Counted from the first letter of the stretch, positions 9,977 through 61,765 are shown. The stretch: DNA of 64,000 nt from Styela clava (GCF_964204865.1 NC_135260.1:5518001-5582000); one strand, 5' to 3'. Notes: generated from the sequence alone by a model not told the origin. Made by a program: numbers and translations.

Positions 9977-12900
9977 ATGCTAAAATATATCATCAACGTC
10001 ATAATTCTGCTATTTATAGGTAAGTATGTTTAATGCTTCTTGAAAGAAACCATATTAAACTATTAATAGATAAATATATCCAATTAAATCTTAAATACTA
10101 TTCAATGCATAATAAATCATTTTTTTTTAATTGAATATGTGTTTTTATCAGTAGGCAACTAATAAATGTATTCAATTTCTTTTATAAATTTAAATTGTCT
10201 CAATGGAATATAATGTGAATTAAAATTTATGCCAGATGTATTTGTAGTACAAATGTTGAGTCTTTTATTCATATTTGAGTACCATATAAATTCATATTAT
10301 TATGAAAATAGAAAGAATAGCTGGCTGAATTTCAGATGATATGTGTTTATTGTAGTGATATTGGGTGTGATGTAATGATTCATTAGATATTGGGTACAAA
10401 ACTGCAAATTTTCTTTTAAAATAACTTCTGTAAATATTATTATTTATTTGATTTACGTATTATTTTATCGTCTTTTATGCTGATTATGTAGTCGAAATAA
10501 ACTTATATTTTTACTTATTTTCCTATAGCAGATATGATCAGTATGAATGAAGCAGCATTATGCACTGATTGCCCAAATCCAATACTTGGAACAGAGAGCG
10601 AAAATATCACGTATGGTTCAGGTAATGAATACAACTGCGAATGTGATTGGACAATACCAACAAGCTTTGAAAATGATGACAATTATGCACTTGTGCTTTT
10701 GCTACAGAATGAATCTCTGTCTTATACAAATGCGAACATTCAGGGTTGCTCTGGAGCTATAAGATTTCCAAGTACATGTGAGAAAAATAATTTATCAACT
10801 TTTTTACAATATTTATTAGTTTCTTGTGATACTTTTAAATGTTGCATAATTGAGGGGTTTATTATTGCGTTTACTCCATATTTGAGAAGACACAAACCTT
10901 CTCAAGGGAGGCAATCGGTTAAGTTTTAATACTCAGTAAATCAGTCAATGCTGGTCTTTTCAATGCAGAGCAGCAGTATTGATCATTGTAAATGATAATA
11001 GTCTGTCTAGTGTCTATGTGACAAATTTTTATAATAATAATTAATATTTATTTTCTCTGTGTGAAGATTTTCCTTAAAAAATTTTATAAATAATAATGTG
11101 TGTGAGCCGAAAATATCTCCTCAAACATTTTTACGTTTAGAAAACGCTAAATCCAAAATCCAAACAATTTCTAATCACACGTTTTCAACCAAGCACAAAG
11201 CATTTGTTTGGGAAATTGTAATGTCCTCACAGATCAGATAAGATCAGATCAGATCAGTTTGTTAATTGAAATATATTATAAATTATTACAGACTTGAATG
11301 GATATGTATGCGACTACCAGCAAAAGCACTGTACTGTGATAACAACTCATTCAACTAGTTGCGGCATCAACAAAATAAAATCACAAATACCAGATAAGAA
11401 CCATAAATGTGATTCCATCATTCATTGGAGAAATATATCCAGAAGTTCATACAAATTGCAATACAGATCAAATAACCTGTTTGGTTACACGAAATATTTC
11501 AGAATCCAATACCTTCCTATCAGCTGTGAGCAAACCACAACAGCAGTGGTGTCAGCACAAATTAGCAGTAAGAATATTTCTTGGTACTCTCATAGTATGT
11601 GTTAACAGGTTAGGATTGGGCCATAATTTTATTACGATTTCTTTATTTTAGTTCTATTACGAGTTCGAGGACTGTCCGTGTTAGCCAAGTGAATACATCT
11701 CTGCCCATAGGTTTCAGTCCCTTTGCAAAACTTGATGTAAAGTAGGCAAACAAAATTAGTTACCTCCATATTGGTACACATATACTTCTGGAGCACCTAT
11801 TTCTTTATGTTTTCAAATTTAGAAGAGTTAATGGCCTAGAAATTGTTGGCATCACAGATGACACATCTCTGGTTGAAATACCATGGCCAGCACCTCACCC
11901 AGGATAAAATGAATTGGGCAAGTAATGCCAAACCAGAAGAATTCCAGTCTTTCAAGAAATGGTCTCTTTACATGACACAATTTAAATTTTAGGATAGGAT
12001 TTACATATTTATCTCGGGGTATGGGTTTAGTTAGTCAGTTATTCAATTCAGATGATGGATTTGATGGAGGAAGCCAGCTGTTACGTGAACTACCCTACAA
12101 GAGTACAGCAAACCTCTTGCCAATATTATTCCCCATGGAAGATAATCAGAGGTGCGGTGGCGAGTGTATTCGCAATGCTTAGCATAATGTACCACACCGC
12201 TGAGTCGTTTCATTGCACTGCCTTGAATACTACCATAGAAATGGTGATTTACAAGCCATACATTATGTCTATTATTTTCACATTAAAATGGTTCGACTTC
12301 AACACTCCAAACAAGGCGAACACCAATATTTAAAAATATTGCTAAAGAGCTGGTATTTTTGGAAAGAGGTCTTGAATGCAATTAGTGCAAAATTTTTTTA
12401 ATTTTATCATTTTTTTACCGTAAGCATAAAATTTTACATTTTATCTCCAGCTACTCAAAACCCAACAACAAGACCAGGAGTTACAGATCCAATTTACGAA
12501 AGCAACACAGCAAGTAATTCATACTATTATTTTACACAATATTTAAAAATGATATTTAGAAATGATATTTAAAATTCCTGGTCAGCTGGGGCCGATACAA
12601 AAGCTGTTAATCCCATAAAATTTTAAAATGTCCGGCCAATAATAAAAGCAACAAAACGACCGAGAGAGAACAAAAGTATCTTAGAATATCATACAAATTT
12701 TCTGTTTGCACTTGGCATCAAAATATTATGTTTTTCGACTGTCCTAATATATTGAACTTCAAAAGTATACGAGTTATGTACAAAGTGGATATTACCATAT
12801 TATTAATGCTATGAAAGAAATATCCTGACTTTCCATTGATTCAGAACATTTATGTTCATTTATGTTTGAGTCAAAAAAACTACAAGGAAAACATGGCAAC

Positions 12901-14171
12901 ATATTCACAAAGCCAAGTATTACTATAATGAGCAATTGATATAATATAGTGACAATGCCTAATTTGTGCATTATATGGTGTCCACGAAGACTCAATTTTT
13001 TAAAATTGCAAAGGGATTTATCGATACCATATGTTGTTTTGGCCCTCACAGATATGAAGTGAAAATACTTGATAATACAATTACTGTTTTAAAAACAACA
13101 AACCTAGTTAAGATATATTGAGAACTGACTTCATAAAAAATTGAAATTATAAAGGGACTTCATGGACATCATGTATATTCAATTCTGCAATTCTATTCAT
13201 TTGTGAATAAAAAAACATCATATATTCATAATAATAAATTTCAGAATCAAATACCACTACAGTGAAATCACATGAATGTTCTCAAGAAAATGTGAATGCA
13301 GCCATTGCAGCAGTGATAGGAATAATTGGAGGCTTTGCTATTGGGATTGCATTTTCATACATTCTGAAGAGGTTAGGAAATTAAAAACTTATAGCTTGAA
13401 AATTAAGTTTCACTTGCAAAATAGGGGCTGTATATTGAACTGGAGGTCATTTCTTCTTGTCTATTTCCTACTTTGGATTAGTATGTGTCAGTTGCCATGA
13501 GCTGCAAAGTACCCAGGGCGAGTGGGGTTTGCGGTTTGGTCCGCCCTTTTGAAATGTAAAAAATTCTATATCATACAGAGCAATTTTTTGTGGCTTGAAA
13601 CACTTTTTAGAACCTCAATACTTGAAAACGAGCCACTAGCTGTTACGGTCTATTAGGCGAATAGAAATTACAGGAACCCACCCCTTTAAAATTCCCGACT
13701 ATGCATTTGGCCACTAAGATGCTTGAATGGGATTGAATATAAAGACAAATAGCATAATCTATTTCCACAAAATAGAAAAGTATATTTGTGATGTTTCGTT
13801 AGATCACAGTCTAACCTTTTTCAGACAAAACAAAATATAACTGTCTATAATATTACAATCATTGTCAATTAAGTTAATATAACAAACTCTGAAAAATCTT
13901 TTCACCTTTCTACTAAACTAGTCCAAAACAAAGACTTTGAAAGTAATATTTTTTTTGTCTATGAAGATACCAAACCAAAAAGAAGATTACAAAGAAAACA
14001 GGACAAAAAGGAACACCAGAAGCACGTGGAGCAGCTGTGGAACAGGAAATAACTTTTAACAACCGTGCACCAACAACTGATGACAGTGGATATGAAATTC
14101 CAAATCAAAATAATGGAAAGAATAGTCACCAATACGAGGATATATATGATAGAGAATATGAATATGAATAG
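9977..14171 (+). CDS. Receptor copy RA (divergent): CUB-like type I membrane protein with non-ITIM tyrosine-rich tail, ~318 aa
   Basis: Exons 9977-10019 (signal MLKYIINVIILLFI), 10529-10771, 11292-11567, 12451-12513, 13245-13371 (TM AAIAAVIGIIGGFAIGIAFSYILKR), 13967-14171 (tail ending DDSGYEIPNQNNGKNSHQYEDIYDREYEYE*). GT-AG, phases 1,1,1,1,2 as in the other copies; 957 nt open. Confidence 0.85.
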
Positions 14172-21468: not shown

Positions 21469-21553
21469 TGTGATTATTTCGCGCCCACGTTCTATGTTAT
21501 AGAGAATTCTCATATAGCAACGCAACACGCTTTATCGAAAGACAATGACGTAG
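21469..21553 (+). promoter_or_regulatory. Conserved upstream module of R1-R8 (CGCCCAC core, then TGACGTA); R1 instance given
   Basis: CGCCCAC at 21482, 26553, 31460, 36338, 41293, 45827, 51377, 55465, i.e. 176-267 bp before each ATG. TGACGTA at 21546, 26617, 31484, 36403, 41351, 45885. The core is kept in R6-R8, where flanking sequence has diverged. Confidence 0.6.
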
Positions 21554-21731: not shown

Positions 21732-24700
21732 ATGAAAGAATTACCTGTGATCAATGAGGCGGTATTTTGGATTCTATTATTTTGTAAGTATTTTTAATTC
21801 AATTTTCTGTTTTCTTCATTCAAAATTTTACTCAGGGATTAAGTGAGAAGTATTGTCAACAGTGATGGTTAATTACGACTTCATCTTGAAATATTTGTAT
21901 AAAAAAACTTGGGGTTACTGGCAACACAATTTTTAACCTATAGTTTAGTACTACAAAAAAATTAATTTAGAATTCAACTGTGAATAATTTTATTTTTTAA
22001 TAGAGTCAGTAGTCCTTGGCACTATGGCAGCTGTCCATAGTTTCGCTCAGGGATTATTCTCTTTAATTTCTGAGTGAATTTTCATGATCTTGCTCAAAAA
22101 AATGATTATACATTATAAGTAAATTAAAAATAAACATTGATGATAGTTGAGTGTTATCAGGCAAACATATTTATTTACAGGTTGTGGAAGTAAATATAGT
22201 GAAGCAGCTGGAAAATGTGATTGTGAAAATACACAACTTGGAACAAAGAGCATAAATATCACATATGGACCAACTAATGAACACAACTGCAACTGTGATT
22301 GGATAGTACCAACAAGCATGGAGACAGATCAAGGAACTGCAGTTGTTCTGTTGTTACAAAATGTTTCATTTCCAATGACAACACCTAGCAGAGGACAGAG
22401 AGACTGCAGTGGAGAAATCAGATTTCCAAGTAAGTGTCAGGCTTATAAAAATCTGAATCCCGGTCATGAAAACAGAAAAAATACTATGCTAGGGGAGCCA
22501 TAAACCATAGCTTAGTTCAGGGTGGTCCAAGGTTGTCGGCCTCGCGGGTCACACTATTATTTTTGTATTGTTCGCGGGCCACAATAATGCCAAGAATAGG
22601 TAAGCAGTGCAATACAAAACAAACACTTTTATTGTTCAAACACATTGATCATTATTTGTCATTTATCAAGCAAAAAAACGCAAAAACCACCAAAAAACTA
22701 ACTGAAACATGCAAAAATCTTACTATATACTGTATATATATTCAGTGTAAAACTTCAAACTTTTCATAACGGAGAAAGTGTCATAAGGAGAAAATGCCGT
22801 TTTATATTGCCACCAACACAACTTGCAGACATATTAAACAAGCATTGTGATATTTTCGCTCCCATATCCAGTAACGCAGGTCACAGATAATGAATGAAAT
22901 GCGACGCAGGTCACAGATAATGAAGCGGAGGGCCACATGTGGCCCGCGGGCCTGGGTTTGGACCCCCCTGGCTTAGTTCAACCAACATCTTGACCTGTTT
23001 TAGAAAGTTTGCAAAGTCAGTTGTCAAAATGAGTGAACATTGAAGAAATTCTGTTTTCTATAAAATAAGACTAGACACAATATTGAAGTATTACCATTTA
23101 TTATGAGAACTCCAATATAGGATTTGATTTTCATATTTATCCAGGGAATAAGAAAAGCTGATAAAAAGGCCTAATCATGAGAGTTTCAAACCTGCGAACC
23201 CAAGCAGGATAATGCTAACGCTTAGCATGATGCGCAATACCGCCGCCGCCACTAAATCAATTCATAGCCCTAATGAGTAACTAAAACAGAATCGGTTATT
23301 GAGTGAACAGAGCATCTCTCAGATTTTGACATATACAATGTGTTCAGCAATATCAAAATATTTTATACAGGTACTTATTCACACAAATGTGAATTTCCAA
23401 GCAACTACTGTCTTGTATTTGCAACTACATCAACCATTTGCAACATCAACAAAATGAAAGAGGTAATTCCAGTTGCAAATCACACCTGTGATTCAATCAT
23501 TCCATGGAATAGAGCTGGAGGAAGCCCATACAGGATACAATACAATGCAAAAAACTTTGACGGTTACACAAAATACTTCACAATACGATATCTTGTAATA
23601 GATTGCAGATCAACAACCACACCAGAAGCGAGTGAGCCATATACACTTCAGATGGCTACTAAATTAATGTTAATTCCTTCAATTGACACAAATAAAAAAT
23701 GTTTAATAAAATAGGACTAACCGGAATTTAATAGGTGATAATATTAATAGGGTTGACCTGGCTTTGTTATGGAATTGGTAGATTTTATGGAATATGTGAG
23801 TAAACAAATTTTGAGATGTTATAACGGATATAACGGGCCTATATTTGTATTGCATTTAGAATATTAAAAATATTTCGTATAAATATTCTGTTGAATAGTT
23901 CATAAAAAACTGTAGCAGGAAAGGCACTTTAGCTTATCCAGCTTTCATATGTTGTGGTGAGGTGCAGGAGCTTTGGATACATCATGTTATCTTGGGACTG
24001 GATTGATATTGACTCCAATTTTTTTATCCACAGAAATAATTTTAATTTTTCGAGACTTTTAAAAGAAACAAACACATAATGTTTCCCAATATGTACTTAT
24101 CATAATTTCCTTTTGACACTGGAATTCAATTTGTGAGGAAGTACGGCCATTGTATGTTCTTTAAAAACATAGAATATTATTTAATAAATTAAAAGAACAA
24201 ATCCAGCATACTGCGATCTCCAAAAATATTTTAAAACGCATAATTCTTAGAGACAACAACATATATTGAGGAGACAGCTAGAGGTAATTCAACAAGAATA
24301 AATCTGTCACTATCTACAGATATATATATTGAGACAACCATGAGAGGAGATGAAATCAGCAACAAAAGCAACACCAATAGTAAGCTATAGTGAAGACTTG
24401 AAATAATTAACCTAGTCAGGGCGCATGGTTGAATTAAGACTTGAAAAAGTAGAACAAATTATCTTTAGTTTTAATGTTTTAAGAATTCTATAATGGACTG
24501 CTCATGATGTATTGTATCACACAACTCCAGGGTGGTCGTTAGAAAAACAGAATTTGTCAAACAGCTGTTTGTTTTTACAAAGATTAACTATTACAAAGTT
24601 TATATGTTATGGCATATGTTATATTACATTCATAGATGCTCAAAATGTCGCCCAGGCACTTTGGAGAAGTGTCTTAATTCAAAGTCTAGGCTCGTGTAGC

Positions 24701-44500: not shown

Positions 44501-45092
44501 TACTATAAAATGGAATTAAAGTCCTCATCTCCAATCTGGGAAAGAAATGCTGTCACTAAGATTTTAATTAGCTATATTTTAAAGTTTTCAGAAGGTTACC
44601 AGCACTTGCCTGAAAGCAATTAAAACCACTCAAAAATAGAAGTGACAGTATTTTTATATGTGAAGTTACAAAATTATTTTTATATGGCGTTTTTCACATC
44701 TTTCACTAAACACAAGGCATCAGCCACTGATATGTGTGAGGTTAATATTATTTGGAAGAACTTGGTTCAGCGTTGCTTGTGCAATTTCGTACATCTTGGA
44801 ATGTTTGTACATTTTTTAAAATTTTGAATACTGATGTGTTTTTTAAAACAGATTCTGCCGAAGTGACAATAATAAGATTTCCAAAACCATTGAGCAAGAA
44901 AATGACAAAGTACTTGAAGAAAGATCTGAGAGAGAAATTGTTGAAAATGCCATCTATGGAAGATCACTCAATGATCAACAAGGACCAGAAACAATCATCA
45001 ATGAAATATACGACACAACTCCAGATACTAATGACGAAACAACAAAGACAGATGATCCATGTTTATATGCAGTCGTTCAGAAGAAGGAATAA
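41536..45092 (+). CDS. Receptor copy R5 with premature stop removing the distal ITIM, ~355 aa
   Basis: Exons 41536-41587, 41969-42211, 42862-43125, 43785-43919, 44110-44242, 44852-45092. TAA at 45090-45092 where paralogues have AAA. Ancestral stop at 45192-45194. Confidence 0.85.
42386..42737 (+). mobile_element. tRNA-derived SINE in R5 intron 2
   Basis: Reverse complement of the 2467-2796 family, ending ...TAAATCCTATTCTATCC. Confidence 0.82.
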
Positions 45093-46049: not shown

Positions 46050-49000
46050 ATGAAATCGGAAATCGGAATCTTATGGTGGATTTTTATTATGTGTGAGTGT
46101 TTCTTTTTAATTTTTCAAAATAACTGAATTTTGTTCTGCGATTATTTTTTTCAATACTCTAACTCAGATTTTAGAGATATTTCAATATTCCATATCAAAT
46201 GATTTGTATAAAAGATAACATTGCACTTTTAAGTGCAGGTCATACAATTTATTTAACTCTGTGTAACTACCATGAATTGAAACTTCTGAAAATGGTATAA
46301 ACACCATAGTCATTTTAAATCAGAAGTAACAATTGGACCTAATTCAAAGATAGAATATGAAACTTAAACCTATGCCTATTAAAGTTGGGTATATATTTTG
46401 AGTATATGTCAAATCAAAGATATATATCCTAGAAATGAATGTCTTGCCCTCTATGTAACTTGGAGGCTTTTGTTAATATTTGTGATATTGAAAGATATAT
46501 TTATTCTAAATTTTCAAAATCTATAATGCATATTTCACAGCTTATAGCATCACTTTGACAAGAGCAACCATATGCACTGATTGTCCCAATGAAATACTTG
46601 GAACAGAAAGCAAGAATATCAAATATGGACCAAGTAATGAATACAACTGCAACTGTGATTGGACAATACCAACAAGTATGGACACAGATCATGAAGCTGC
46701 AGTTGTTCTGTTGTTACAAAATGTTTCACTGCCAATAGATACTAAAACTAGCAGTTCGGCAGAATGTTCGGGAGAAATCAGAGTTCCAAGTAAGTGTTCA
46801 GATGATAATATAAGACTCCGATACATGAAAACAAAGAATAGCTTATGCCAGGGAAGTCACAAACCTAAGACAAGTGCAAACAAAGTATCGATCTTTTCTG
46901 GAAAAAACAGTGGCCACAACCCCATAAATTTAAACCTAGCAAGAGAGCATTGGAGAAATTGAATTTTTTTTGCAGAAGTATATTTTGAACGATAATTGAA
47001 GTTTTACCCAAGGCTGGGGAGCTGGTTCGAAATCATGATGGCTTCGGTTTCAGCTCTGGAGTCGCACCATATTCAAACTTTGGCTTTGGTTTCGCAAATT
47101 GGAAAGCATTATTTTAAAATACTAAGATGAATCGGAAAACCCCATAAGTTTTGTTTCAGAATGCTCACAACAGATTAAAAACGCCTTTTCAGACATTGTA
47201 AATCTCCTAATTTTGTGTGGCTACAGAACATACTATTTACTGGTTGGCTTCAGAAATCATACCATCACTGAGATAAATCTATACGCAATCAATCGTGCTC
47301 GCGATGTACCTTTTCATTAATTCTAACAACAACGACGAAAGCAGATTAGACTTTTGCCCAGAACATGATATGAGATAATGTAAAGTAAATTCATTCCATT
47401 TTTTACCGGATATTCATCAATCTTTTTCTAACAGTGATATTCTGGAAATAATGTGATTAGCAGCATTACAATAGAGTGGAGTCAGTGTTGCAAGAACTCA
47501 GATTTGTAGAATTGCGAATACGAATATATAAAAAATACGAAAAAAGCACAAGATATAATCGAGCAATTTACCACGCATTTTTATACCTGCAGACTGCCAT
47601 GGTATTTTGGAGTAGTAAAGCTTTTCTTTTGTCATAAAAAGACGCAACCGCAAGATACGTGAAACAGAATTAATAGCCTTTTAAATGGATTGGATATTTT
47701 ACGCAACAGAAAAATCACAATATGTTGCATTGGAATTTCCAATTCCAAAACCCCTGTATATGCCCCTGGCCATTATGATTTTTGAGCTAGCCCACAATCA
47801 TGAAAAATTGCGGAAATTAGAACCAAAAATGTGATATAAGCATCTGATTCAAATGTTGATACTAAACTTTTAAACATATAATGATATAGAATAGCTTTTG
47901 AATTATTATTGAGAACTAAAGTTTATATAATGAATCATAAGCTGAAAAGGATAGATTTTATCATTTATAATGGGTAAATTAGGAATTGTGACTATCCTAA
48001 TGCTTATTGACTGAGAAGGGTAAATCCGATGTATTCAGCATTAACAATATACTATATTCAGGCACTGATGCATATAAATGTGATTTCACAAGCAACTACT
48101 GCCTTACATTTGCAACTGCATCAACTATTTGCAACATCACGAAAATCAGAGAGAAAATTCCAGTTGCAAATTACACCTGTGATTCAATCATTCCATGGAA
48201 TAATGCTGGGGGAAGCCCATACAAGATAGAATACTATGCAAAAAACAGTGCTGGTTACACAAAATACTTCACAATACAATATCTTGTGATAGATTGTAGA
48301 CTTCCAACTACAACTCAAGAAGCAGGTGAGAAAACCATGGGATAATTTAAATTTAATTGATCTACGAAAAGCTGGCAATTTTTTCTTATGAATCAAGGTC
48401 CAGGGTCCCCAACTAAAAATTAAAAGAGTACTGATAGAAGGGTGGGAACTGGGAAGCAACCAATGACACAATACCAGCAATAATATTTTATCCCGAAAAA
48501 CTGTTAACAGATACCACTTAATTCCATAAGCTCAGGATCATTTTGGAATAAAAGTTGAAAATTTTAATATACCAATCAAAATATATTTTATAAATTTGAC
48601 TATAAATACAGCTTGGTAGAGATAATAAATTAAATTCTATTTCTACACTTTCCTAAATTTGTAATTGACAAATGCATTCAACGATTCCAGTCATTTATTC
48701 ATTTCAAACTCTAAAATATTACACGAAAAAATTCCCAGAGACGACAACATATGAAAACACAACAGTGATAACCCAATCATTATCCACAGAAATAATCCGA
48801 AGTTCAGCGCATGATATCACAGAGAATCATGCCCACTCCGAAGACGACTTTACAGGTATGAGGACCAGCATTATAGTGATACAACTTGTACACATATACA
48901 AATATTCACAGCAATTAACCAAACTAAAATTATAAAGTGACATGGGGAGAAAGCACTTCAATAAGAATAGTACAAAGCTGCAGTATAGTGCAGTATATAA

Positions 49001-50499
49001 ACTTCTTTCCACTTCTCTCATTTATGAAAAACTTTTTTATATACTCGTGCACAGATTGCACTCGATTGAATAAAAAATTGTGCCAAATTCAAGAGTGCGC
49101 CCCATTGAATCCACATTGAAAGATTATTACTAGTTTGTATGATGAAATTGCCCCAAACAAAGGGACTTTTTTGTTCTCTGGCAAACCATAACCATAACCT
49201 AAATCCATGAATATCTGAAGCAGCGGTCCCAAACCGGCAGCCCAGGGAGCCACAATGCTAGACGCAAAACTGATTTTACCTTTCACTTCCCATTCTTTCT
49301 AGTTTCATTGCTTAATGGGGTTTTTTCATTGTGTGTTTTAACATTTGTTTGAACATGATAGAATTTGTAATCTAATAATCAAAATAACACTCCAAATACC
49401 ACTGGAATGATAATCAGGAAGGCCATGAGTCATGAAAAGTAGGAGGTCAGAGATCGAAACTTTTCATAGATTGGGACCTATGGTAAGGTATGACCTATGA
49501 GTGGCCAAAAAACTCACTATAATATAATTACATACTTGCAATGCGCATCCTATTCAAAATTACTTTTTAAGCCATTTGTAATTCATGACAATTTTAACAC
49601 AGGGGTTTCAACCAATCCTGCAGAAGCAACAAGTGTTCGTCAAGTTCAAGTCATGAATACAACAACAATCATAATCATAGCTGCCTCAGTCTTAGGATTA
49701 GCCATTGTAGTGGTATCTGCTCTAATACTGAGAAGGTAAAGTGATAGAACTTATATATATTTATAATAAGGTGGATTGAAATCAAACTTAAAATGATACA
49801 AATGATAGCACTGAAAAAATTTCAATTTTCGTATGGTTTGAAATATAAAAAAATTATAAAATTTCATTTGAGTGGAAATAAGATTTTTGCACACAAACAG
49901 GGGACAATTTCACTTGAGTCACTTTAGTAGGAACACTAAGATTTTACAACTTCAAAAATTTAGGCCCTTTGCCTTAAACAGGAAAAGTTTAAATAAACTG
50001 ACTATTCATTAGCAGATGAAATATGTTGAACAAATGCAAATTCTCAATCAAATATTACAATGTGACAAACCATTGAAATTATATTCAAATATTTGATGGC
50101 TATATTTTCCCTCAAGAAATGTATTTAAATATACCATTCAATTTGTATCATCTCAGACGCTGCCGAAGGGACAATAATGATATTTCTAGCACTAACGAGG
50201 AAGGAGGTCAGGATAAAGCTGATGGTAGCTCTGAGAGAGAAATTGTTGACAACGCCATCTATGGAACATCACTTAATAATCAACAAGGATCAGAAACAAT
50301 CATCAACGAAATATACGACCCAACTCTGGATGCGGATGGCGAAAAAACAAATACAGATGAGATATGTTTATATGCAGTCGTTCAAAAGAAAGAAAAAACA
50401 GAAGACAAGAATGTGGTGACTGAGGGTAACGATGACATTGCCACCGTTGAAGATGAACCATCCAGCATATATGCAGTGGTGAACAAAGATAAGAAATAA
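46050..50499 (+). CDS. Receptor copy R6, ITIM-bearing, ~382 aa
   Basis: Exons 46050-46092 (MKSEIGILWWIFIM), 46541-46789, 48062-48325, 48739-48855, 49603-49735, 50157-50499. GT-AG, 1149 nt open. Confidence 0.87.
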
Positions 50500-51643: not shown

Positions 51644-54600
51644 ATGAAATTAAAAACATGTTCTATGGATAAAAATGGAATCCTGTGGTGGATTTCAATT
51701 ATATGTAAGTATTTTTTCAACTTCTAAAATATCTGAATATTTTTTGTGTGAGTTTTTTTTTTAGAATCCTTCATATCAAGTTTTTACAAGGCTCGATTGC
51801 ATAGCAATTTTGGTTCTGTTAACATCATTTGAGAAAAATGAAGAAGAAAAAAATGATTACTAGAAACACCATAGTTGAAAAATTTATTTAACTTAAGCAA
51901 TAACAATTGCAACGATTACCCTATTTAGTGAAAAAAAAAAATACCCAATTTATATGCATATTTAACGATGATAAAATACATAACAAGATTGAAAATTGTG
52001 CATTGAATGATTTCATCCATATGATAATGCAATTTTAACAGCACTCAGCATCAGCCTGAATGAAGCAGGACGATGCACTGATTGTACAAATACAATACTC
52101 GGAACAAAGAGCGAAAATATCACATTTTATGGACCAACTAATGACTTCAACTGTGAATGTGAATGGACAATACCAACAAGTATGAAGACAGATCATAAAA
52201 CTGCAATTGTTTTGATGTTACAAAATGTTTCATTGCCATTGACAACGAGTAGCAGTACAGACTGCTCTGCAAGTATCAGATTCCCAGGTATTACACTATC
52301 AACAGTTTTTACTCAATCTTCTACTATGAATAAAAAAAACTTTATAACACTTGAATCAGGGGCGGCCACTTTTCATAATTGGGGGGGGGGTTAATCCAGA
52401 ACCTAGGCCTCTTTGCTTGGACATGGAACTCATGTGTCACAAAACCGATCCCTTGAATTCCGCAAGAATTGGACCACCACCCTGCTAACAGACAGAAACA
52501 ATAAATTTGAGTCATATTTGAGTATTGTTTCAACTTTTAGTTTTGCATAAAGCGCACCACCACCAAAATTTTACCAAGGAAATATCATTTAACCAGTAGA
52601 ATTGCCATCATTGCCAATTTATTTAATCATAATAAAGCAACATGCAGGATTCTCGCAATGACAACTTTACAGGGTTTTTATTTATTATTTAATACGAAAA
52701 TATTCGGTGTCAGAAATAATATTGTTAATTTAAAATTGGGACCTTTAATTTATCAACGGTGACGATGAAGAACACAGACGGCCCCAAACGATAAAAATCG
52801 GAATAAAACCCTCAAGCTGTCTGTCTTTAACATATGTTGCCGATATGATTGCCTAGTTCTCCCGGGAATATAAAAACAAACCTTGCGTGAGAATTGAACC
52901 TTGTGAAAAAAAGACGAGCAGAAATGTAGCTCACGAACATTAAAATGTCTAGCGTTCGGGATGCCTGTTGTATATATATTAAAAATACCTGATATTCCAA
53001 AATTCGTTAAAAATATTAGAATTATTCGATTCTATAAAATTATTTCATTTTGACCACCCTTGCAATCTGTAATCACGCAACCTGGAGAAACACGTGGTAG
53101 TCCAAACACTGATGCAATGAAACTTAGTAAAACCTTCATTAAATTTAGTAATTTGCACTACTCCACGAAAGCGTGGTGGAACTGACAATTATTTCCTATC
53201 TCGAACACAAAACGGTTATCTTTTTAGGATAGTCTCAGGGGTTTGAAAAGTCGAATAAGTGTTTTAACATAGTAAATTGTATGATCTTTGCCATAAAATT
53301 ATGCTCGAGCCTTGCACGAAATTCATAATGTGAAAAGATATGATCAGCGGTGAAAATTGTTTATAACAACTTTAAACCTATTTAGGGCAAAACCGAAGCA
53401 CAATAATGTGAGGTGGTCCGAATGTGATATCGAGTACGTTATTCTAAGAATACAGTTATATTATTGCTAACTATTAACTATTTGTTCGCGCTCGACTGTC
53501 GCATTTTTCGGAAATGATAATTTTAATTTTGTAAGGCGGAAACAACATGTGTTTAAATATAGACGAACTTTTTATTTTGAATAAAAAACAGCATGCGAAA
53601 CATGGAAGATGTAAAAGCAAACAAAAACATCTTCTACAAATTTCCCATTTCCATGACTTTAATAATTATTTGTCAAAAAATTTCGCAGCAATAAAAACAA
53701 AAATATATTTTAAAACATTTTTGCAAAACTATGAGATTACTATTAACATATACCAGTACTCAAAACAAGAATATGCCAATTTCTGGTACTGCTGATTTTA
53801 CCTGTAATCACAACAAAATATTAAAGAGATCATCTTTTGTAGGCGCTGATGGGGCAGAATGTGAATTTCCAATAAACTACTGTCTTACATTTGCAACTGC
53901 ATCAACTATATGCAACATCAACAAAATCAGAGAAAAAATTTCAGTTGCAAATCACACCTGTGATTCAATCATGCCATGGAATAAAGCTGGAGGAAGCCCA
54001 TACAAGATACAATACTTTGCAGGAAACTATGCTGATCACACAAAATACTTCACAATACAATATCTTGTAATCGATTGTAGACCTCAAACAACTACACCAG
54101 AAGAAGGTGAGAAAAAGCAATTAAAGATTATATTAAAAAATTAAATGTTCTGAATGAAAATATATTTTTGTTAACCAATACTATTCGTACATCTGCCACA
54201 ATCAGTGGTAATGTTTAAAATTATATCCAAGTAATGATCACTATCCCAATCAAAACATATTTGTGGAATTGACAAAAAAGTATGGTACATATTTGGGGGG
54301 AGATAATCAATAAAATTGCCTCAATCAATAAAAGATCATGACCAATAATATTTTAATATAAGCATATTTTCTTTTAAATACCTTTGGTTTCCTAAAACTT
54401 CAAATAAGACATACCAGTATGAATATTCTGTACAAATATTTCCATATTTTGGTTCAACCTCTAAAATATTACAAAACGAAACTTCTTAGAGACGACAGCA
54501 TATACAGAAATCATATCTGACAATAACACAACAATGATAAAACAATCAATATCTACAGAGATAACCGGAAGTACAACCCAGATTGTCTCCAAGAATCCTG

Positions 54601-55243
54601 CCGCTACTGGAGAGAACATTACAGGTATATAGGTGTGATCAATTTGCTTTCTCACAAATTTCCATTGAATGCAGCAAACCATAACTTGAATAATTAACTA
54701 TTAGGAGTTATTTTCATGGGACGCATATGCATTCCTCCAAATAAGTCCTTTTATAAACACTCACTGATATCCATCATCCAATATTACGTAAGGATATACT
54801 ATTAATATGGAAGGAGCGAAATCTTTCCGATTCAGCATTACTAACCCGATTTATTACACCCTGGGTGAGATGGGGGGGGGGGGGGGGGGGGCAAGGATTT
54901 GAATCCTCGATGTAACATCTGCAATACCAACACAATTAAGTCTAACACTTTTACCTGTGGGCCATCATGCCACTATTTTTGAAACATCGGGGGGACTACA
55001 CATAGGTCAACTGAAACTACCCACGAAGAAAATTATATACTCGATATAACAGGTATAACATGTTACCCTTGTTAAGCCTTCTGTAATTTATCTAATATTT
55101 ACACAGTAGTTGCAACCAGACCTATAGAAGCAACAAGTGTTCCTCAAGTCCAAGCCATAAATTCCACAGCAGTCATCATAATAGCTGCCTCCGTGGCAGG
55201 ATTGATCACTATAGTGATATCTGTTCTACTTATAAGAAGGTAA
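51644..55243 (+). CDS. Receptor copy R7 lacking the cytoplasmic-tail exon (~280 aa if read through to the intronic stop)
   Basis: Exons 51644-51704, 52042-52287, 53843-54106, 54490-54624, 55107-55239. No exon 6: the R8 promoter motif starts at ~55465. Read-through gives AGA AGG TAA (55241-55243). Confidence 0.78.
54872..54891 (+). repeat. Poly-G run (20 nt) inside a degenerate interspersed repeat
   Basis: Seen directly. Flanks resemble 545-615 (TTTATTACA.CCTGGGTGAG...). Confidence 0.7.
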
Positions 55244-55640: not shown

Positions 55641-58600
55641 ATGAGAAAGAAAAAAGATTTCCTAAATAAATATCAAATTATTCTCGGGATACTGATATTA
55701 TGTGAGTATTTTATTATCTGGGCATATTCTGGATATGTTTGTATATTTATGTTTCTATATTTAATTTGATGAATGACTGAAACCCAATATTTCATTTTAA
55801 ATTTTTATAGCAATCAGCCTTAGTCTGAATGGAGCCCAAATATGCACCAAATGTCCCAGTGTAATACTTGGAACAGAGAATGAGAATATAACATACGGAC
55901 CAAGTAATGAACTCAACTGCCAATGTGATTGGACAATACCAACAAGTATGGACACAGATCATGAAACTGCAGTTGTTCTGCTGTTGCAAAATGTTTCACT
56001 GCCAATGACAACGGATGGAATTACAGACTGCTCTGGAGAAATCAGATTTCCAAGTGAGCCGATTTGGTCCAATTCATAAATACTGTTTAAGCTACCAGCA
56101 GTGATCGGTAGAATTGTAAAAATCTAAACTATTTGTTTTCAAACTGGAGTCCGCGGTCGCTTAGGGGTCCGCGAAGCGATTTTAGAGGGACCACAAGACA
56201 ACTTGAACCGTGGCACAAAAGCACTTTAATCTGAAGTAGGCTACATCAACTATTGATTTCATTCTTGGTGAACATATTTGAATCAGTGAATTTTGTTAAT
56301 TTGGCCCTGCAAGGAAACGATATCACCGTACTCCAATGTCATGAAAAATTAACTGCCTTCAAAATGAAGCTAACATAATGGCGATCTGAGTTAGAAATCA
56401 GTAACTTTGGCCAATTTCCAGATCGAAATTCATTTATCGATTAAAATGAACTTGACATAAGAGAAGAAAGTTATCGTTGCTTACCTACCGTACCTTACCA
56501 GATTTTGAAAAATATTATCGATTCTTCAATAACCTGTTTGGAATCACTGTTAGCGATCTACCTTCGGAAGACAGTTTAATTCAAGAACAGTTTATCGATC
56601 TTGTGAGCAGGGATGGCCATTTCCGAATACTAAACTATTCCGAATACATTCTTAAATAATGTTTTCGAATCTGGAATTCCGAATACATTCTAAAATCGAA
56701 AATAACACATTTTTGTTTTAGTTTATTAAAAACCAGTAAATTAGGAAATAAGCTTTAATAGAAATATCAGAATAAAGCCACAAACCAACAATATATGTAC
56801 ACAAAGTAATTGATAGTTTATAGCTATCAATAAAAAATAATAGCAGCTTGTGACACAGTCAGTTTATTAAAATTACTTACTTTGTACAAATGACCATATG
56901 AAAAGATAGCCATTGAGGAGTTGTTTGACGCTTTCTATCATTGGTACCATGATATTACGATAATAGTCAAGTCTATTGACAAAAATACTACTTGTATTCA
57001 GATAATTGTGTATATTTTCTGAAAGTAATAAAATTTATTGGCAATACAGGCAACTGAAACAAGCAACAACAATCGAAAATCCATTATTCCTTTAAAAAAT
57101 TCTAATATTAAAGCCTAGAGTATTCTACTACCTACCAGTATATTTTTATATTAATTTATTAGAACCATATTGTAATTATGTGTAACATATTGTTGTGTTT
57201 GAAATTAGAAATGAATTAGTAGAGGATAGATGACCACCACTGCCAGCCGCGCAGCCAGGATTTTCGAAATCGGAAATTCCCATTGCCGCCTGTAACAACC
57301 ACCACGATTACGCGCTCGTTAAAAGAGTCGTCTTTTCAGCGTATAATGATCATCCTGTTACGTAAAATATTCAATCCATGACAACTACGAGATTTTAAAA
57401 TATCTTTACATATTAATTTAATGCGTCCAACGTAACTCGCGGTTGCTTCTTCTTACGTCAAAAAAACATTACTATTCGGTCCACGGCGATCTGTGACCTA
57501 AAAGTATGAGATAAACTGCCTGATGTATTTAATTTTAATACGTATTTTTGCAATCTTGCCAATTCGTTATCGCCGTTAGAATAATCTCAAATAATGATAT
57601 AAAATCCTGTTAAGTGTAGAGTATAATTCATTTCATACAAGGAATATACATATAAAGTTTAGCAGTAAATAAAAAATACATATTCATCGCCGCGATTATG
57701 CCACCTGTTAGAAGCGTCGACTTTTACAACAAATAATATAACAACGAATATATATTTTTCTGTTGTGCAAAGTGATGAATTCGTGACCAATTGTCTTCAA
57801 TTTAACCTGCGGTTGCGTCGACAAAATAAAATCCTCACCACTCTTATATACCATTGCAATTCGTGGTCATAAAAATAAAAACGTGTGGTAAACCAGCCGA
57901 TTAAATAATGTTTTGATCCGTATTTTGCGAATTCGGCAAATAATTAGATGTACTTGTTAGAAAAAACTGTTCAAAAAATCCATGAATCTGCTGTAACATC
58001 TCAGAGTAAAATTTATTTCATAACAATAAAATTGATTGAATATACTTTAGATTAATTATATTATATACATCCTCACAACCCGGGCGTTTCGAACCATGTA
58101 TCATGTTAACACGAAAATATTCGACGGCAATTTAAAGTAATGGATAACCAGGCAAATCCCGCTCTCAATTTGTGACGATAGGTTTCTAAACGTCGACCAA
58201 ACCAAATTTTGCGATTTTCACTGCCTAGAAAAGTGTTATTTAAACTTTCGTGGGCCTCAATAAAACTTATATTGTTTACGGTTTTATTTTTAGTATTTTA
58301 AATTGCCACTTCTCAATCAAAAAGTTGCGTTGTCTTTAGAAACTCACCGCCGATGAACGTATTTTACCAGATTCACAATTCCGTGCGCGTACAAAAATAA
58401 AATAATTGTCATCATTATCGTGTAACAAATTTGTGGGAAATTTTCGTTTTAGAGAAATTAACACAAACGTAAAGGCGTTTACGGCCTAAATAACACGTTA
58501 CGCTGATGAGTGATGAAAACAATCACGCGCAAGTTTTTATCAAGAATGTTTTCATTCAACGGAAACGTCTTGAAAGCGACTTCGAAAATGTGTGACGTCA

Positions 58601-61600
58601 CACAAATATCGATATTCTTATGAAAGCTAATTCTGATATTCGAATAACGAGATATTCGAATACATTTGAATACTTTATTCGAATTGACCATCCCTGCTTG
58701 TGAGTGATGGTGGTACAAAACCAAATTTACAAGACATGCCCGCAGTGAATTTGGATTGAAATGGCCTATCCCGATGTCGCTAAGATGGCACTAAAACTTG
58801 CGAATGGGAGGCAGCTTTTTCTACGTTACTTGCTATTAAAACAAAATGCCGAAACAGTATGGCTGTGAGACACGATATGAGAGTTGCATTATCCAAAACA
58901 GAACCTGAGGTAGTAAAACTAGTGGAAGCCAAGAAGGCGCACCCATCTCATTGAATAGTGGAAAGAGGGTCATCAGAAAAATTGTAAGGGGACTGTTATG
59001 CGTAATTTTTCAAAAAGTTTGAGAACCACTGGTCTAATCCTTATAATAGTCAAGTTTGGGCTTGTTAGAAATTTTGAAGATTCCCAGAAGGTGATTTATT
59101 CCCAGAATGTTGGTGTTAAATGATAAAAAATGGTCTTTTGTTAGAACTAATTTTTGCTATATTTAGGTTGAAATCTAGCGAATGAGATTTGCAAATTGAA
59201 AGAGAGTAAACAGTATCTTGCGAAAATACAGAATATTCATTACATAGAGGTCATAAATTTTTTTAGAGGAAACTGTGACCAAACAAAATGATTAAACTTA
59301 GGTAACGAGTAATGCTTTGTGAGTCTAGTGTAAACGCGTACCAATCATCTTCTTTTCTTATCCAATTAATAAAAATAATCATAAATCCCATTCAGGTTGA
59401 ATGGTCAATACCTGGGCAAGCATTTATCCTATGAAATCCACACAAATTTCAACAAAAAATCATTTTTCTCAGAAAATATTTCACTCATCAATACTTTGGT
59501 TTTTGTTCAGGCACTAATCAGGCAAAATGTGAGTTTCCAACCAACTACTGTCTTGTATTTGCAACTGGATCAACCATTTGCAACATCAACAAAACCAGAG
59601 AGAAAATTCCAGTTGCAAATCACACCTGTGATTCAATCATTCCATGGAATAGAGTTGGAGGAAGCCCATACAAGATAGAATACTATGCAGGAAACCATGC
59701 TGGTTACTCAAAATACTTCACAATACAATATCTTGTGATAGATTGCAGACCAGCAACAACCAAAATACCACTCAGTAAGTGTCATAAACCAATCTTATGT
59801 TACTTTTTTCAGTCCTTAACACTCCTTTAAAACAACCAAGAGAATATTCAATCAATTGATGCTAAGGCTAAGGGCATAGCTGACAAAGTGACATGAGCAA
59901 AAGGTTAATTTATCAATTTAAGGGTTGTGATAACGTTGACAAAGACAATACACATGGGTTCAAGTAACACGCTTGGTACTTGCATAGTATGTATACCAGG
60001 GTAGGGTTAGGCCATAATTGTAATCCGATTTTCCTTATTTTAGTTTTATTCCAAGTTCAGGGACTGTCTGTGTTAGCCAAGCGATTATACCTGCCCATAG
60101 GTTTGAGTCACTTTACACAACTTGATGTAAAGTGTGCAAACAAAATTAGTTACCTCCATATTGGCACCATACTTTTGGGGCGCCACATGCTCAGTGGAAC
60201 AGCTGAGATCAGAAGAAATTTTGAAAAGGTACAGTAAAAATTATACATTGATTTGTGTGATTTTGTGCTCAACCATACAGCAGCTTTCATTGAAGATAAA
60301 ATATTAAAACAATTAATACTGTTTTATTTCAAGGCACCACTGAAGCAGCAGGATTTTCAACAACGCCTATATCAACTATAGGAGAAAAATTACACAATTC
60401 AAGTACCGGTAAGTAAAAAATTCAAATCAATCCATTCATACACTATGCTACAAGCAAAGCTTAACAGCTCAAATATCTTGAACTTTTAAATACCGTAATT
60501 TACGGACAATAAGGCTCACTTTGAATCTTTTTTCTCTGAAAATCGATCATGCGCCTCTTAAGCCGGTACGCTGAATGTATCACGTAATGCTTTATGGCCT
60601 ATTTACAAAACCAGTATCTATACTATTGTTTTATAAACAAACTGTCGTTTTATGTTTTTTTTAGATAAAATTCAATACCCATTAAAATATTTTTGTTTAA
60701 TGAATATTGTATGGTTAACCCGATACTCCTTAAAAACCGTCTTATGGTCCGCTGTGCCTATGTATGGACAGAACCTCAATCTAAGCAATTTATTGACAGT
60801 GCGTAAATACGGTGTATATTATTTATATAACATATAATATTTATATAATAATCTTTATCACCCAATAAATATAAAATGAATATCACACTACAACATTGAC
60901 CAATGTCTTAAACAATTTGACAGGCAATGCTGAATTAGAAGCAACTACAGAGCAGACAGAATCTTTCAATCATCCCACAACAATCCAATCCAGCACTCCC
61001 AACACAGAATTGATGAGCAATACAAAACTTATCATCATAATTGCAGCCTCAGGTTTAGGATCACTTATCATTGTGACTGTTATCTTGCTGATAGGAAGGT
61101 AGGGATATATTTCTTGACATAAATTTAATTAAATTTATGAATTCAATTTTTTCCTGATCTTGGTTCAAGTATGAAAAATAATGATATATTTAAAGAAAAA
61201 AAAGATTGAATTGGGATGCTGGGGTGTCACTGTACGTTCTGCCTCTTTTTTTATATGATATATTTATATGCCTTTTGTGCTAAACACGTCCTACGTCCTT
61301 GTTTCAGCACGTAGGCTAATGGAAAAATACTACAGCACACTACAGCAATTAATTAATTAAAGAAAAAATGAGTTATTATTATTATAATTTATATAATATA
61401 TACGAGTTTTCAAACATTACCATATCACTCACTACAGATATCACTGCCCAAAAAAGAGTTCAACGACCATTGGAGACAGCAATGACAACACTGCAGATGC
61501 TGGCACTGAAAGGGAAATTGTTGATAATCCACTCTACGGCACAACTCCGAATGGCCATCAATCAGAAATAATCATCAATGGGATTTATGACACAACTACA

Positions 61601-61765
61601 GGATCTCAAGATATAGAAGAAAATGCAGCAATTGACGAACCATGCGTGTATGCAGTAATTCAGAAAAAAGATTCCCCACAGAATGAAATGAAAGCTGGCA
61701 CTGTAATCATCGAAGATGATGAACCTTCAAGCCTTTATGCAGTCGTGCATAAAGACAAAAAGTAA
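55641..61765 (+). CDS. Receptor copy R8, ITIM- and NPxY-bearing, ~381 aa
   Basis: Exons 55641-55701, 55811-56053, 59511-59774, 60334-60408, 60924-61098, 61438-61765. GT-AG, 1146 nt open. Tail motifs DNPLY, NGIY, CVYAVI, SLYAVV. Confidence 0.87.
56130..59031 (+). mobile_element. Decayed Buster/Charlie-type hAT transposon with transposase C-terminal remnant, split by a younger insertion
   Basis: Right end AAGTTTGAGAACCACTG, degenerate left end, flanks ATCTAAAC / GTCTAATC with central TA. 58750-58954 encodes, with frameshifts, WIEMAYPDVAKMALK...CEWEAAFSTLLAIKTKCRNSMAVRHDMRVALSKTEPEVVKLVEAKKAHPSH*, the Buster-family C-terminal dimerisation signature. Confidence 0.78.
56608..58696. mobile_element. 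2.1 kb non-autonomous hAT element nested in the Buster remnant
   Basis: TIR CAGGGATGGCCA / TGACCATCCCTG, subterminal CGAATA repeats at both ends, perfect 8-bp TSD CTTGTGAG at 56600-56607 and 58697-58704. No long ORF. Confidence 0.9.
60491..60814. mobile_element. Pogo/Tigger-like MITE in R8 intron 4
   Basis: Imperfect inverted ends TACCGTAATTTACGG / GCGTAAATACGGTG. Confidence 0.5.

What the first reader, a model, noticed from the sequence alone, without database searches (positions are those of the whole stretch)
9977..61765. Tandem cluster of nine CUB-like receptors with ITIM tails: candidate undescribed invertebrate paired immune/allorecognition receptor family
Seen: nine + strand paralogues share one exon plan (phases 1,1,1,1,2; R7 lacks the last exon): signal peptide, 10-Cys ectodomain over two exons, S/T-rich stalk with N-glycosylation sequons, single TM, tyrosine-motif tail. 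Tails of R1-R4, R6 and R8 have two NxxY motifs, then C-x-YAV(V/I) and S-x-YAVV, and a juxtamembrane Cys. Known: (S/I/V/L)xYxx(I/V/L) is the ITIM consensus, and tandem ITIMs recruit SHP-1/SHP-2. Tandem, fast-diversifying clusters mixing inhibitory, activating and truncated members typify LILR/KIR/Ly49/SIRP. Inference: the same logic is built here on a CUB-like rather than Ig or C-type lectin ectodomain. I do not recognise the family.
Basis: partly seen in the sequence, partly recalled or inferred. Interest (0 to 1): 0.93.

Follow-up and report, generated by a model that had tools for sequence, protein, structure and literature searches.

The report
Sea-squirt CUB-like receptor gene array
Nine neighbouring genes in the sea squirt Styela clava are the start of a roughly 40-gene, unstudied family of cell-surface receptors that join one CUB-like outer domain to alternative tyrosine-signalling tails, a layout like vertebrate natural-killer-cell receptor clusters, though nothing is yet known of where they are expressed or what they do.

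Summary
Nine + strand genes lie between 9977 and 61765. Each has six GT-AG exons with phases 1,1,1,1,2, encoding a signal peptide, a 10-Cys ectodomain on two exons, an N-glycosylated S/T stalk, one TM and a tyrosine-motif tail.

- **Organism and models:** it is Styela clava, a solitary ascidian. Six of my models equal RefSeq "uncharacterized" proteins exactly.
- **Ectodomain:** no Pfam hit, but the AlphaFold model's best 21 PDB matches are all CUB domains (Z 6.5-8.5).
- **Family size:** the window holds only the 5' edge of about 34 tandem copies over 258 kb, about 40 genome-wide. The family was found only in S. clava.
- **Tails:** R1-R6 and R8 hold nearly all copies of one tail: two PhixNxxY, then C[LV]YAV[VI] and S[IL]YAVV with tyrosines 32 residues apart. 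Most other members carry YENY, (DESGYEVP)n and QQYE[IV][IV]. A few carry an ITAM-like YEVI-x10-YEEI.
- **Evolution:** ectodomains are intermixed between tail classes and the genes are mosaic.

The paired-receptor architecture is supported. "Inhibitory" and "immune" stay inference: only the distal motif fits the ITIM consensus, and the similar dual motif in Botryllus FcoR1 partners an activating receptor. No RNA evidence could be obtained. The scan's first-stage notes list similar CUB and tyrosine-tail clusters elsewhere in this genome.

The parts
9977..14171 (+). RA (LOC120347103). Exons 9977-10019, 10532-10777, 11292-11567, 12451-12513, 13245-13371, 13967-14171. Divergent copy with a glycine-rich TM and a class-B-like tail (SGYEIP, HQYEDI, EYEYE).
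   Evidence: The spliced translation equals RefSeq protein P0045 except for a NAGNAG acceptor choice, resolved.
21732..25832 (+). R1 (LOC144429959). Exons 21732-21783, 22181-22429, 23371-23631, 24251-24379, 24818-24953, 25496-25832. Full class-A tail.
   Evidence: 100% identical to P0022 over 387 aa.
25584..25814 (+). Tail motifs of R1, as the example: NAIY 25584-25595, NQIY 25638-25649, CLYAVV 25698-25715, SIYAVV 25797-25814. There are 32 residues between the two YAVV tyrosines.
   Evidence: Alignment A4. N30, Y33, N48, Y51, C68, Y70, A71 and V72 are invariant among the seven tail exons.
26803..30734 (+). R2 (LOC144429853). Exons 26803-26854, 27194-27445, 27839-28102, 29069-29203, 29399-29468, 30398-30734. 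The ancestral exon-5 acceptor is mutated AG to AA; the downstream acceptor keeps the frame, the TM and the tail.
   Evidence: The translation equals P0023 (369 aa) exactly.
31664..35619 (+). R3 (LOC144429852). Exons 31664-31721, 32417-32665, 33140-33403, 34023-34151, 34590-34725, 35283-35619. A decayed second copy of exon 2 lies in intron 1, at about 32056-32315.
   Evidence: 100% identical to P0021. Mosaic identity to R1: 74-78% in the 5' part and 90% in the 3' part.
36588..40565 (+). R4 (LOC144429506). Exons 36588-36639, 36991-37236, 38020-38283, 38910-39038, 39487-39619, 40229-40565.
   Evidence: RefSeq isoform X2 (P0024) differs only by 23 residues missing from exon 4.
41536..45092 (+). 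R5 (LOC144429512). Exons 41536-41587, 41969-42211, 42862-43125, 43785-43919, 44110-44242, 44852-45092. The tail ends at a TAA after the first YAVV. The lost part is still recognisable downstream.
   Evidence: 100% identical to P0025. The tail match runs through one TAA at 87% identity.
46050..50499 (+). R6 (LOC144429754, XP_077974076.1). Exons 46050-46092, 46541-46789, 48062-48325, 48739-48855, 49603-49735, 50157-50499. This protein was the one folded.
   Evidence: 100% identical to P0001. Structure.
51644..55239 (+). R7. Exons 51644-51704, 52042-52287, 53843-54106, 54490-54624, 55107-55239. No tail exon. Read-through of the last donor meets TAA at once, giving a tailless receptor.
   Evidence: RefSeq fuses it to R8 as LOC120347104 (P0020, 624 aa).
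55641..61765 (+). R8. Exons 55641-55701, 55811-56053, 59511-59774, 60334-60408, 60924-61098, 61438-61765. The exon-5 acceptor at 60924 is the least certain boundary. Most divergent class-A tail: NPLY, NGIY, CVYAVI, SLYAVV.
   Evidence: Residues 37-381 are identical to the second half of P0020.

Best explanation
The window holds the 5' block of a large Styela clava-specific array of type I membrane receptor genes. There are about 34 tandem copies over 258 kb on this chromosome and about 40 in the genome.

Shown:
- Each gene encodes a signal peptide, one divergent CUB-like beta-sandwich of about 155 residues with 10 Cys, a glycosylated S/T stalk, a TM helix with a juxtamembrane Cys, and a cytoplasmic tail built of conserved short tyrosine motifs.
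- The family has at least three tail types on interchangeable ectodomains.
- The window's R1-R6 and R8 carry the class-A tail, which is nearly confined to this block.
- Variation is concentrated in ectodomain loops, while the tail motifs are under purifying selection.
- Paralogues exchange segments.

Inferred mechanism:
- The variable loops of the CUB-like domain bind a ligand on another cell or a microbe.
- Clustering lets Src-type kinases phosphorylate the tail.
- In class A, the two PhixNxxY sites dock PTB adaptors. The C-terminal pair of PhiYAVV sites, 32 residues apart, engages a tandem-SH2 protein, most plausibly an SHP-type phosphatase.
- Class B and B' tails (YxN, YxxP, YE[IV]I, and YEVI-x10-YEEI) dock Grb2-, Crk-, Src- or Syk-type SH2 proteins.
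- Cells expressing several members would then integrate opposing signals, as with paired NK-cell receptors or Botryllus FcoRs.

My odds: a real functional receptor family about 0.85, tyrosine-based signalling about 0.6, class A inhibitory about 0.35-0.4, immune or allorecognition use about 0.35.
For: - **Gene models:** intact six-exon genes with canonical splice sites and conserved phases, identical to independent RefSeq models.
- **Family size and location:** 41 exon-3 matches, 34 of them tandem and + strand at C14 5.529-5.787 Mb.
- **Taxonomic range:** only S. clava proteins among 1.84 billion representatives, and likewise in two searches of 5.8 billion clusters.
- **Fold:** ectodomain pLDDT is about 80-90. 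Foldseek's top hits are C1r and MASP CUB domains at probability 0.97. All 21 best rows of an independent whole-PDB alignment are CUB domains, Z 6.5-8.5, rmsd about 3 A over 98-123 residues. Language-model neighbours include CUB clusters.
- **Tail classes and distribution:**
- **Tail constraint:** dN/dS is 0.18-0.32 for R1 against R2, R3 and R8, and the motif residues are invariant.
- **Ectodomain evolution:** dN/dS is 0.6-0.9, with some pairs at or above 1. Variability lies in loops. Identity is mosaic. Tail class is not clustered on the ectodomain tree. R6's ectodomain is closer to class-B members (69-74%) than to R1 (58%).
- **Signalling partners:** Botryllus expresses SHP-1, SHIP, Syk, Src, Grb2 and Crk homologues (PMC12582321).
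- **From my own knowledge, not tested:** pY-A-x-V fits SHP-2 SH2 preferences. A spacing of about 32 residues matches known bisphosphotyrosine SHP-2 ligands such as Gab1 Y627/Y659.
Against: - No expression, splicing or phosphorylation evidence could be obtained.
- No sequence-level CUB signal exists in any of 32 members.
- Z of about 8 is only at the level where a common beta-sandwich arrangement can score (note).
- The proximal motif has Cys at -2 and is not a canonical ITIM.
- The closest described layout, the Botryllus dual core-2, belongs to the partner of an activating receptor.
- Short tyrosine motifs are weak predictors of binding partners.
- Family restriction to one species may only reflect the poor sampling of other styelids.
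- dN/dS values do not demonstrate positive selection.
Confidence: 0.6

Rival explanations
1. Same receptors, but the class-A tail is not inhibitory. The C-terminal pair of PhiYxVV motifs is the styelid "dual core-2" module and transmits an activating or otherwise non-ITIM signal. The window's block would then not be the inhibitory arm of a paired system.
For: - In Botryllus schlosseri (Styelidae, like Styela), core-2 motifs [A/D]VYxxV occur only in pairs, 29-33 residues apart, at the C-terminal end.
- They sit on monomorphic FcoR1, which pairs with uncle fester, shown functionally to be activating. ITIM-bearing FcoR7 pairs with inhibitory fester (PMC12582321).
- Here the proximal motif (C-L/V-Y-A-V-V) and both motifs of the diverged class-A copies (ALYSVV, CVYAVV) fail the ITIM consensus.
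Against: - The distal S-[IL]-YAVV fits the S-inclusive ITIM consensus in every complete window gene.
- The function of core-2 itself is unknown according to the same paper.
- Homology of the Styela and Botryllus tails could not be tested, because no FcoR sequences were available.
Confidence: 0.25
2. The family is not immune. It serves gamete self/non-self recognition, cell adhesion, or growth-factor or guidance co-reception, like the single-pass CUB proteins CDCP1, DCBLD1/2, neuropilins, Kremen or NETO, whose tails are also tyrosine-phosphorylated docking sites.
For: - CUB, TM and tyrosine-motif tail is the CDCP1/DCBLD architecture.
- The repeated YxxP in class-B tails resembles the CRK/CRKL-binding YxxP repeats of DCBLD2 (my own knowledge).
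- Neuropilin, Kremen and spermadhesin CUB domains are among the best structural matches.
- S. clava is a hermaphrodite broadcast spawner, and rapidly evolving tandem receptor families are also typical of fertilisation proteins.
Against: - About 40 species-restricted, recombining tandem paralogues with alternative tails and truncated members are not what conserved developmental co-receptors look like.
- No sequence similarity to CDCP1, DCBLD or neuropilin was found.
- A gamete role remains open.
Confidence: 0.25
3. The array is mostly evolutionary debris: recently amplified, weakly or not expressed gene copies whose motifs persist only because the duplications are young.
For: - R5 has a premature stop, R7 has lost its tail exon, R2 has lost an acceptor, and R3 carries a dead exon copy.
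- Some copies elsewhere in the array are fragments.
- Transposon-like repeats fill the introns.
- There is no RNA evidence.
Against: - Eight of nine window genes keep complete ORFs and all splice sites.
- Synonymous divergence between copies is substantial (dS 0.2-2), while tail dN/dS is 0.18-0.5 and the motif residues are invariant.
- That pattern is not expected without selection.
Confidence: 0.07

Closest known systems
Botryllus schlosseri fester co-receptors (FcoR), PMC12582321
   Same: - Same ascidian family (Styelidae).
- A clustered multigene family of type I receptors whose members carry alternative tyrosine motifs.
- A C-terminal pair of PhiYxxV-type motifs about 30 residues apart.
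- Diversification by recombination between genes, and truncated variants.
   Different: - FcoR ectodomains are Ig-like plus sushi; here there is a single CUB-like domain.
- FcoRs are encoded as cognate pairs with Fester-family genes. No such partner gene is interleaved in this window.
- Botryllus is colonial with a defined fusion/rejection assay. S. clava is solitary and no function is known.
- Tail homology is untested.
Vertebrate paired NK/myeloid receptor clusters (KIR, LILR, Ly49, SIRP)
   Same: - Tandem arrays of rapidly diversifying paralogues.
- Near-interchangeable ectodomains joined to contrasting signalling tails, with truncated or tailless members and mosaic or gene-conversion evolution.
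   Different: - The ectodomain fold is CUB-like, not Ig or C-type lectin.
- Non-class-A members have no charged TM residue for DAP12/FcRgamma-type adaptors and instead carry their own tyrosine motifs.
- Only one of the two distal motifs is a consensus ITIM.
Single-pass CUB receptors with phosphotyrosine tails (CDCP1/Trask, DCBLD1/2)
   Same: Extracellular CUB-type domain, one TM, and a cytoplasmic tail that works as a Src-family substrate and SH2 docking site. The YxxP repeats are as in DCBLD2.
   Different: - No detectable sequence similarity.
- Those are conserved single-copy vertebrate genes with extra domains, not a 40-member species-restricted array.
Canonical CUB domain (Pfam PF00431; C1r/C1s, MASP, neuropilin, TSG-6)
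   Same: The predicted beta-sandwich superposes on CUB domains over about 100-110 residues (Z up to 8.5). The hallmark Cys-x-Trp in an early strand and a Cys after the central hydrophobic strand are present.
   Different: - About 155 rather than about 110 residues.
- 10 rather than 4 cysteines, with an inserted helix and loops.
- No Pfam match.
- The Ca2+-site acidic residues are not evident by eye.

Membership tests
CUB domain (PF00431) | Significant match to the family profile | tested here: not met
   No CUB hit at E up to 10 in any of 32 members. The family profile against PDB sequences gives no CUB chain.
CUB domain (PF00431) | CUB-type beta-sandwich (jelly-roll) fold | tested here: met
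   On a predicted model only. Foldseek's top hits are CUB at probability 0.97 and E about 0.01. All 21 best VIA rows are CUB, Z 6.5-8.5. ESM neighbours include CUB clusters at 0.82-0.86.
CUB domain (PF00431) | Four conserved Cys forming two disulfides, and in many CUBs a Ca2+ site (Tyr, Glu, Asp, Asp) | tested here: inconclusive
   There are ten invariant Cys.
ITIM-bearing inhibitory receptors | (S/I/V/L)-x-Y-x-x-(I/V/L) in the cytoplasmic tail | tested here: met
   The distal S-[IL]-Y-A-V-V is present in R1-R4, R6 and R8. It is not met under the narrower I/V/L consensus.
ITIM-bearing inhibitory receptors | A second consensus ITIM or ITSM, making a tandem pair | tested here: not met
   The proximal motif is C-[LV]-Y-A-V-[VI], with Cys at -2. 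The diverged copies have A-L-Y-S-V-V and C-V-Y-A-V-V.
ITIM-bearing inhibitory receptors | Tyrosine phosphorylation, SHP-1/SHP-2/SHIP recruitment and inhibition of an activating signal | not testable with these tools
   Needs biochemistry and cell assays.
Paired receptor clusters (KIR/LILR/Ly49/SIRP type) | Closely related ectodomains joined to opposing tail types within one genomic cluster | tested here: met
   Met at the motif level only. Tail classes A, B and B' sit on intermixed ectodomains. The array lies at C14 5.529-5.787 Mb.
Paired receptor clusters (KIR/LILR/Ly49/SIRP type) | Activating members have a short tail and a charged TM residue that recruits an ITAM adaptor | tested here: not met
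   The TM segments of class B, B' and RA have no Lys, Arg, Asp or Glu. Their tails are 75-146 residues long and carry their own tyrosine motifs.
Botryllus FcoR family | Ig-like plus sushi ectodomain | tested here: not met
   The ectodomain model matches CUB domains, and no Ig or sushi domain is among the best matches.
Botryllus FcoR family | Dual core-2 motif [A/D]VYxxV, 29-33 residues apart, at the C-terminus | tested here: inconclusive
   The layout matches: two PhiY[AS]VV motifs with 32 residues between the tyrosines, at the C-terminus. Residues -2 and -1 differ (C/S/A and L/I/V). No FcoR sequence was available to align.

The most novel reading that the evidence does not exclude
The S. clava CUB-like array is the recognition-receptor system behind the allogeneic reactivity of solitary styelid ascidians, or behind their gamete self-incompatibility. 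It would have been built convergently on a CUB scaffold. Its dual PhiYxVV tail would be an ancestral styelid signalling module shared with Botryllus FcoRs. That would give a second, independent ectodomain solution wired to the same signalling logic within one animal family.
Probability: 0.15. Interest if true: 0.85.

Novelty: new variant of a known kind. Interest (0 to 1): 0.6.

Why it matters
Clustered receptor families that set activating against inhibitory tyrosine signals have arisen repeatedly: in vertebrate NK and myeloid receptors, Hydractinia Alr and Botryllus FF/FcoR. They have always been built on Ig-like or lectin folds.

A roughly 40-gene array built on a CUB-like domain, in a solitary relative of Botryllus, would do three things:
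- add a new scaffold to that list;
- offer a tractable comparison inside one ascidian family, colonial against solitary;
- make the meaning of the enigmatic dual core-2 tail testable.

The genes are already in RefSeq but unnamed and unstudied. The practical gain is a defined family, its tail classes, and a map of where the ITIM-like members sit.

Tried and rejected
- **RNA evidence:** Expression and splice junctions are therefore untested.
- **Rest of the array:** Tail classes downstream are sampled, not complete.
- **Exon-by-exon Pfam scans:** these gave nothing meaningful. Full-length RefSeq members gave only weak TM-type hits.
- **PDB profile search:** no CUB chain found.
- **Tail-only searches:** both the protein search and the own-genome tail search found no other family sharing this tail exon.
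- **Literature:** searches for Styela with ITIM or CUB, and for six LOC identifiers, found nothing on the family. FcoR supplementary sequences are not held.
- **Ectodomain tree:** unresolved (3 of 29 branches supported), so it gives no order of events.
- **Repeat ORFs:** Pfam on repeat-like ORFs in introns and spacers found nothing.
- **Joined spliced models:** these were not sent to any search, fold or family tool. Exons were searched by reference, and full-length work used RefSeq proteins returned by those searches. Joined translations were made only inside local scripts, to check frame continuity, to align, blastp and tree them locally with those returned proteins, and to confirm identity with them.
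- **Rejected readings:** a canonical ITAM in RA (YEIP has no L/I at +3), and a charged-TM adaptor mechanism for class B.


Full report
**What is in the window.** An all-against-all comparison of + strand open frames found nine copies each of two Cys-rich exons, seven copies of a tail exon, and matching stalk and TM exons. I fixed the boundaries from the DNA and refined RA and R2 against returned proteins.

R7 stops after exon 5. Eight genes give uninterrupted ORFs of 319-390 codons.

The encoded plan is:
- a hydrophobic signal peptide on exon 1;
- a 10-Cys ectodomain on exons 2 and 3, five invariant Cys each (A1 and A2);
- an S/T stalk with NxS/T sequons on exon 4 and the start of exon 5;
- one TM;
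- Arg/Lys, then Tyr/Phe/Arg, then Cys at the membrane, followed by the tail.

Four copies show damage:
- R5 has a TAA after the first YAVV, and the remainder of the tail is still 87% conserved.
- R7 has no tail exon, and its last donor reads straight into TAA.
- R2's ancestral exon-5 acceptor is AA. The acceptor at 29399 restores the frame and reproduces the RefSeq protein.
- R3 keeps a dead copy of exon 2 in intron 1.

**Organism and annotation.** A profile of exon 3 against 1.84 billion representative proteins gave true hits only to a handful of proteins. Their names show them to be Styela clava "uncharacterized protein LOC..." entries. S. clava is a solitary stolidobranch ascidian in the same family as Botryllus.

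My models of R1, R3, R5 and R6 are 100% identical over their full length to XP proteins. R2 and RA match after choosing RefSeq's acceptors. R7 and R8 are fused in LOC120347104. No paper mentions any of the six loci searched.

Joined spliced models were not sent to any search tool. I searched exon by exon by reference and used the returned RefSeq proteins for full-length work. Joined translations were computed only in local scripts.

**The array is much larger than nine genes.** The exon-3 profile finds 41 matches in the 377-Mb assembly:
- 34 in tandem on the + strand at C14 5,529,297-5,787,412 (the window is 5,518,001-5,582,000);
- three on the - strand at 6.16-6.19 Mb;
- two at 19.05 Mb;
- one on C13.

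**Ectodomain fold.** Pfam sees nothing in exon pieces or in 32 full-length members. A family profile finds no PDB sequence.

An AlphaFold2 model of R6 (P0001) with the 32-sequence family alignment gives pLDDT of about 80-90 for most of residues 25-180. Foldseek's best PDB hits are C1r CUB2 and MASP-1/2 CUB domains, at probability 0.95-0.97 but E of about 0.01.

An independent alignment to 48,161 PDB representatives puts CUB domains in all 21 top rows. These are Gpr126, TSG-6, C1s, MASP-1, neuropilins, Kremen, spermadhesin, cubilin, PCPE-1, enteropeptidase and TMPRSS6. Scores are Z 6.5-8.5 at an rmsd mostly near 3 A over 98-123 residues, spanning 25-177. ESM-feature neighbours include CUB clusters.

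Z of about 8 is borderline by the tool's own note, but the uniformity of the list makes a divergent, enlarged CUB-type sandwich the best reading. I put that at about 0.8. It is not a sequence-level member of PF00431.

**Tails.**

*Class A* (R1-R4, R6, R8; R5 truncated) has four islands:
- EIV-[ED]-N-[AP]-[IL]-Y-G-T;
- I-I-N-x-I-Y-D. Both of these first two fit the PhixNxxY PTB-type pattern, and R8 has a true NPxY;
- C-[LV]-Y-A-V-[VI]-Q-K-K;
- S-[IL]-Y-A-V-V-x-K-D-K-K at the C-terminus, with 32 residues between the last two tyrosines (A4).

This tail exon occurs only here, plus two diverged copies at 5.593 and 6.175 Mb. It is shared with no other protein.

*Class B* is carried by most other members. 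It has TTYENY, one to six copies of (D-E-S-)G-Y-E-V-P, Q-Q-Y-E-[IV]-[IV] and E-Y-Q-Y-D-N. Some have DESGYEYL, which is hemITAM-like.

*Class B'* is carried by at least four loci. It has G-Y-E-V-I, ten residues, then Y-E-E-I, which fits the ITAM spacing rule.

No TM has a charged residue.

**Evolution.**
- Tail dN/dS is 0.18-0.32 between R1 and R2, R3 and R8. Ectodomain exons average 0.64-0.71, with single pairs at or above 1, and the stalk averages 0.88.
- R1 and R3 are 90% identical from exon 3 to the 3' end but 74-78% identical upstream.
- The ectodomain tree is an unresolved star, and tail class is not clustered on it.
- R6's ectodomain is nearer to class-B members than to R1.
- Variable positions lie in predicted loops: 24-33, 80-89, 100-108, 145 and 158-160.

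Together this is the pattern of a recombining recognition-receptor family with conserved signalling modules.

**Interpretation and caveats.** "ITIM" and "inhibitory" are weaker. Only the distal motif meets the S-inclusive consensus.

In Botryllus, a C-terminal pair of [A/D]VYxxV motifs 29-33 residues apart ("dual core-2") is kept apart from ITIMs. It sits on FcoR1, the partner of the activating uncle fester (PMC12582321). From my own knowledge, pY-A-x-V and a spacing of about 32 residues also suit SHP-2's tandem SH2 domains. I therefore keep inhibition as the leading reading at about 0.35-0.4.

Nothing is known of expression. Immune, allorecognition, gamete or other use is open.

**Novelty.** The genes are public but unnamed. 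No relative was detected outside S. clava, with the caveat that other styelids are poorly sampled. The kind of system is known; the scaffold, the tail set and the absence of charged-TM partners make it a new variant.

First-stage notes of this scan list other CUB and tyrosine-tail clusters elsewhere in this genome. They are unverified, and I used them only as leads.

Noticed in passing
window 51644-61765: RefSeq LOC120347104 (P0020, 624 aa) joins R7 exons 1-5 to a cryptic acceptor inside R8 exon 2, near 55858. The product would have a TM followed by a second ectodomain, TM and tail. It is probably an annotation rescue of tailless R7, but read-through splicing is not excluded.
   Followed up: partly
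window 29330-29468: R2's ancestral exon-5 acceptor is AA. An acceptor at 29399 with a strong pyrimidine tract keeps the frame, the TM and the tail, and gives the RefSeq protein exactly. A secreted decoy is therefore not the only outcome.
   Followed up: yes
window 32056-32315: A decayed R1-type copy of exon 2 lies upstream of R3's working exon 2, which is R6-type (85.5% identical to R6's). This is a trace of exon replacement or unequal exchange.
   Followed up: partly
G000:C14:5610664, 5690051, 5726426 (+) and 6183767 (-); proteins P0029 and P0003: A third tail type with G-Y-E-V-I, ten residues, then Y-E-E-I, which fits the ITAM spacing rule. It is joined to the same ectodomain family.
   Followed up: partly
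window 72-188, 5399-5509, 11614-11742, 15486-15599, 39471-39740, 59968-60234, 62242-62400: A short repeated element is scattered through introns and spacers, with open frames that match one another. It has no Pfam match and is probably a non-autonomous transposon.
   Followed up: partly
window 14200-21700: A 7.5-kb spacer separates RA from R1, against about 1 kb between the other genes. It holds two related open frames (17822-18151 and 20161-20430) with no Pfam match, probably inserted repeats.
   Followed up: partly
window 3084-3605 (+): A 173-codon ATG-started open frame lies upstream of the cluster. It was not examined further.
   Followed up: no
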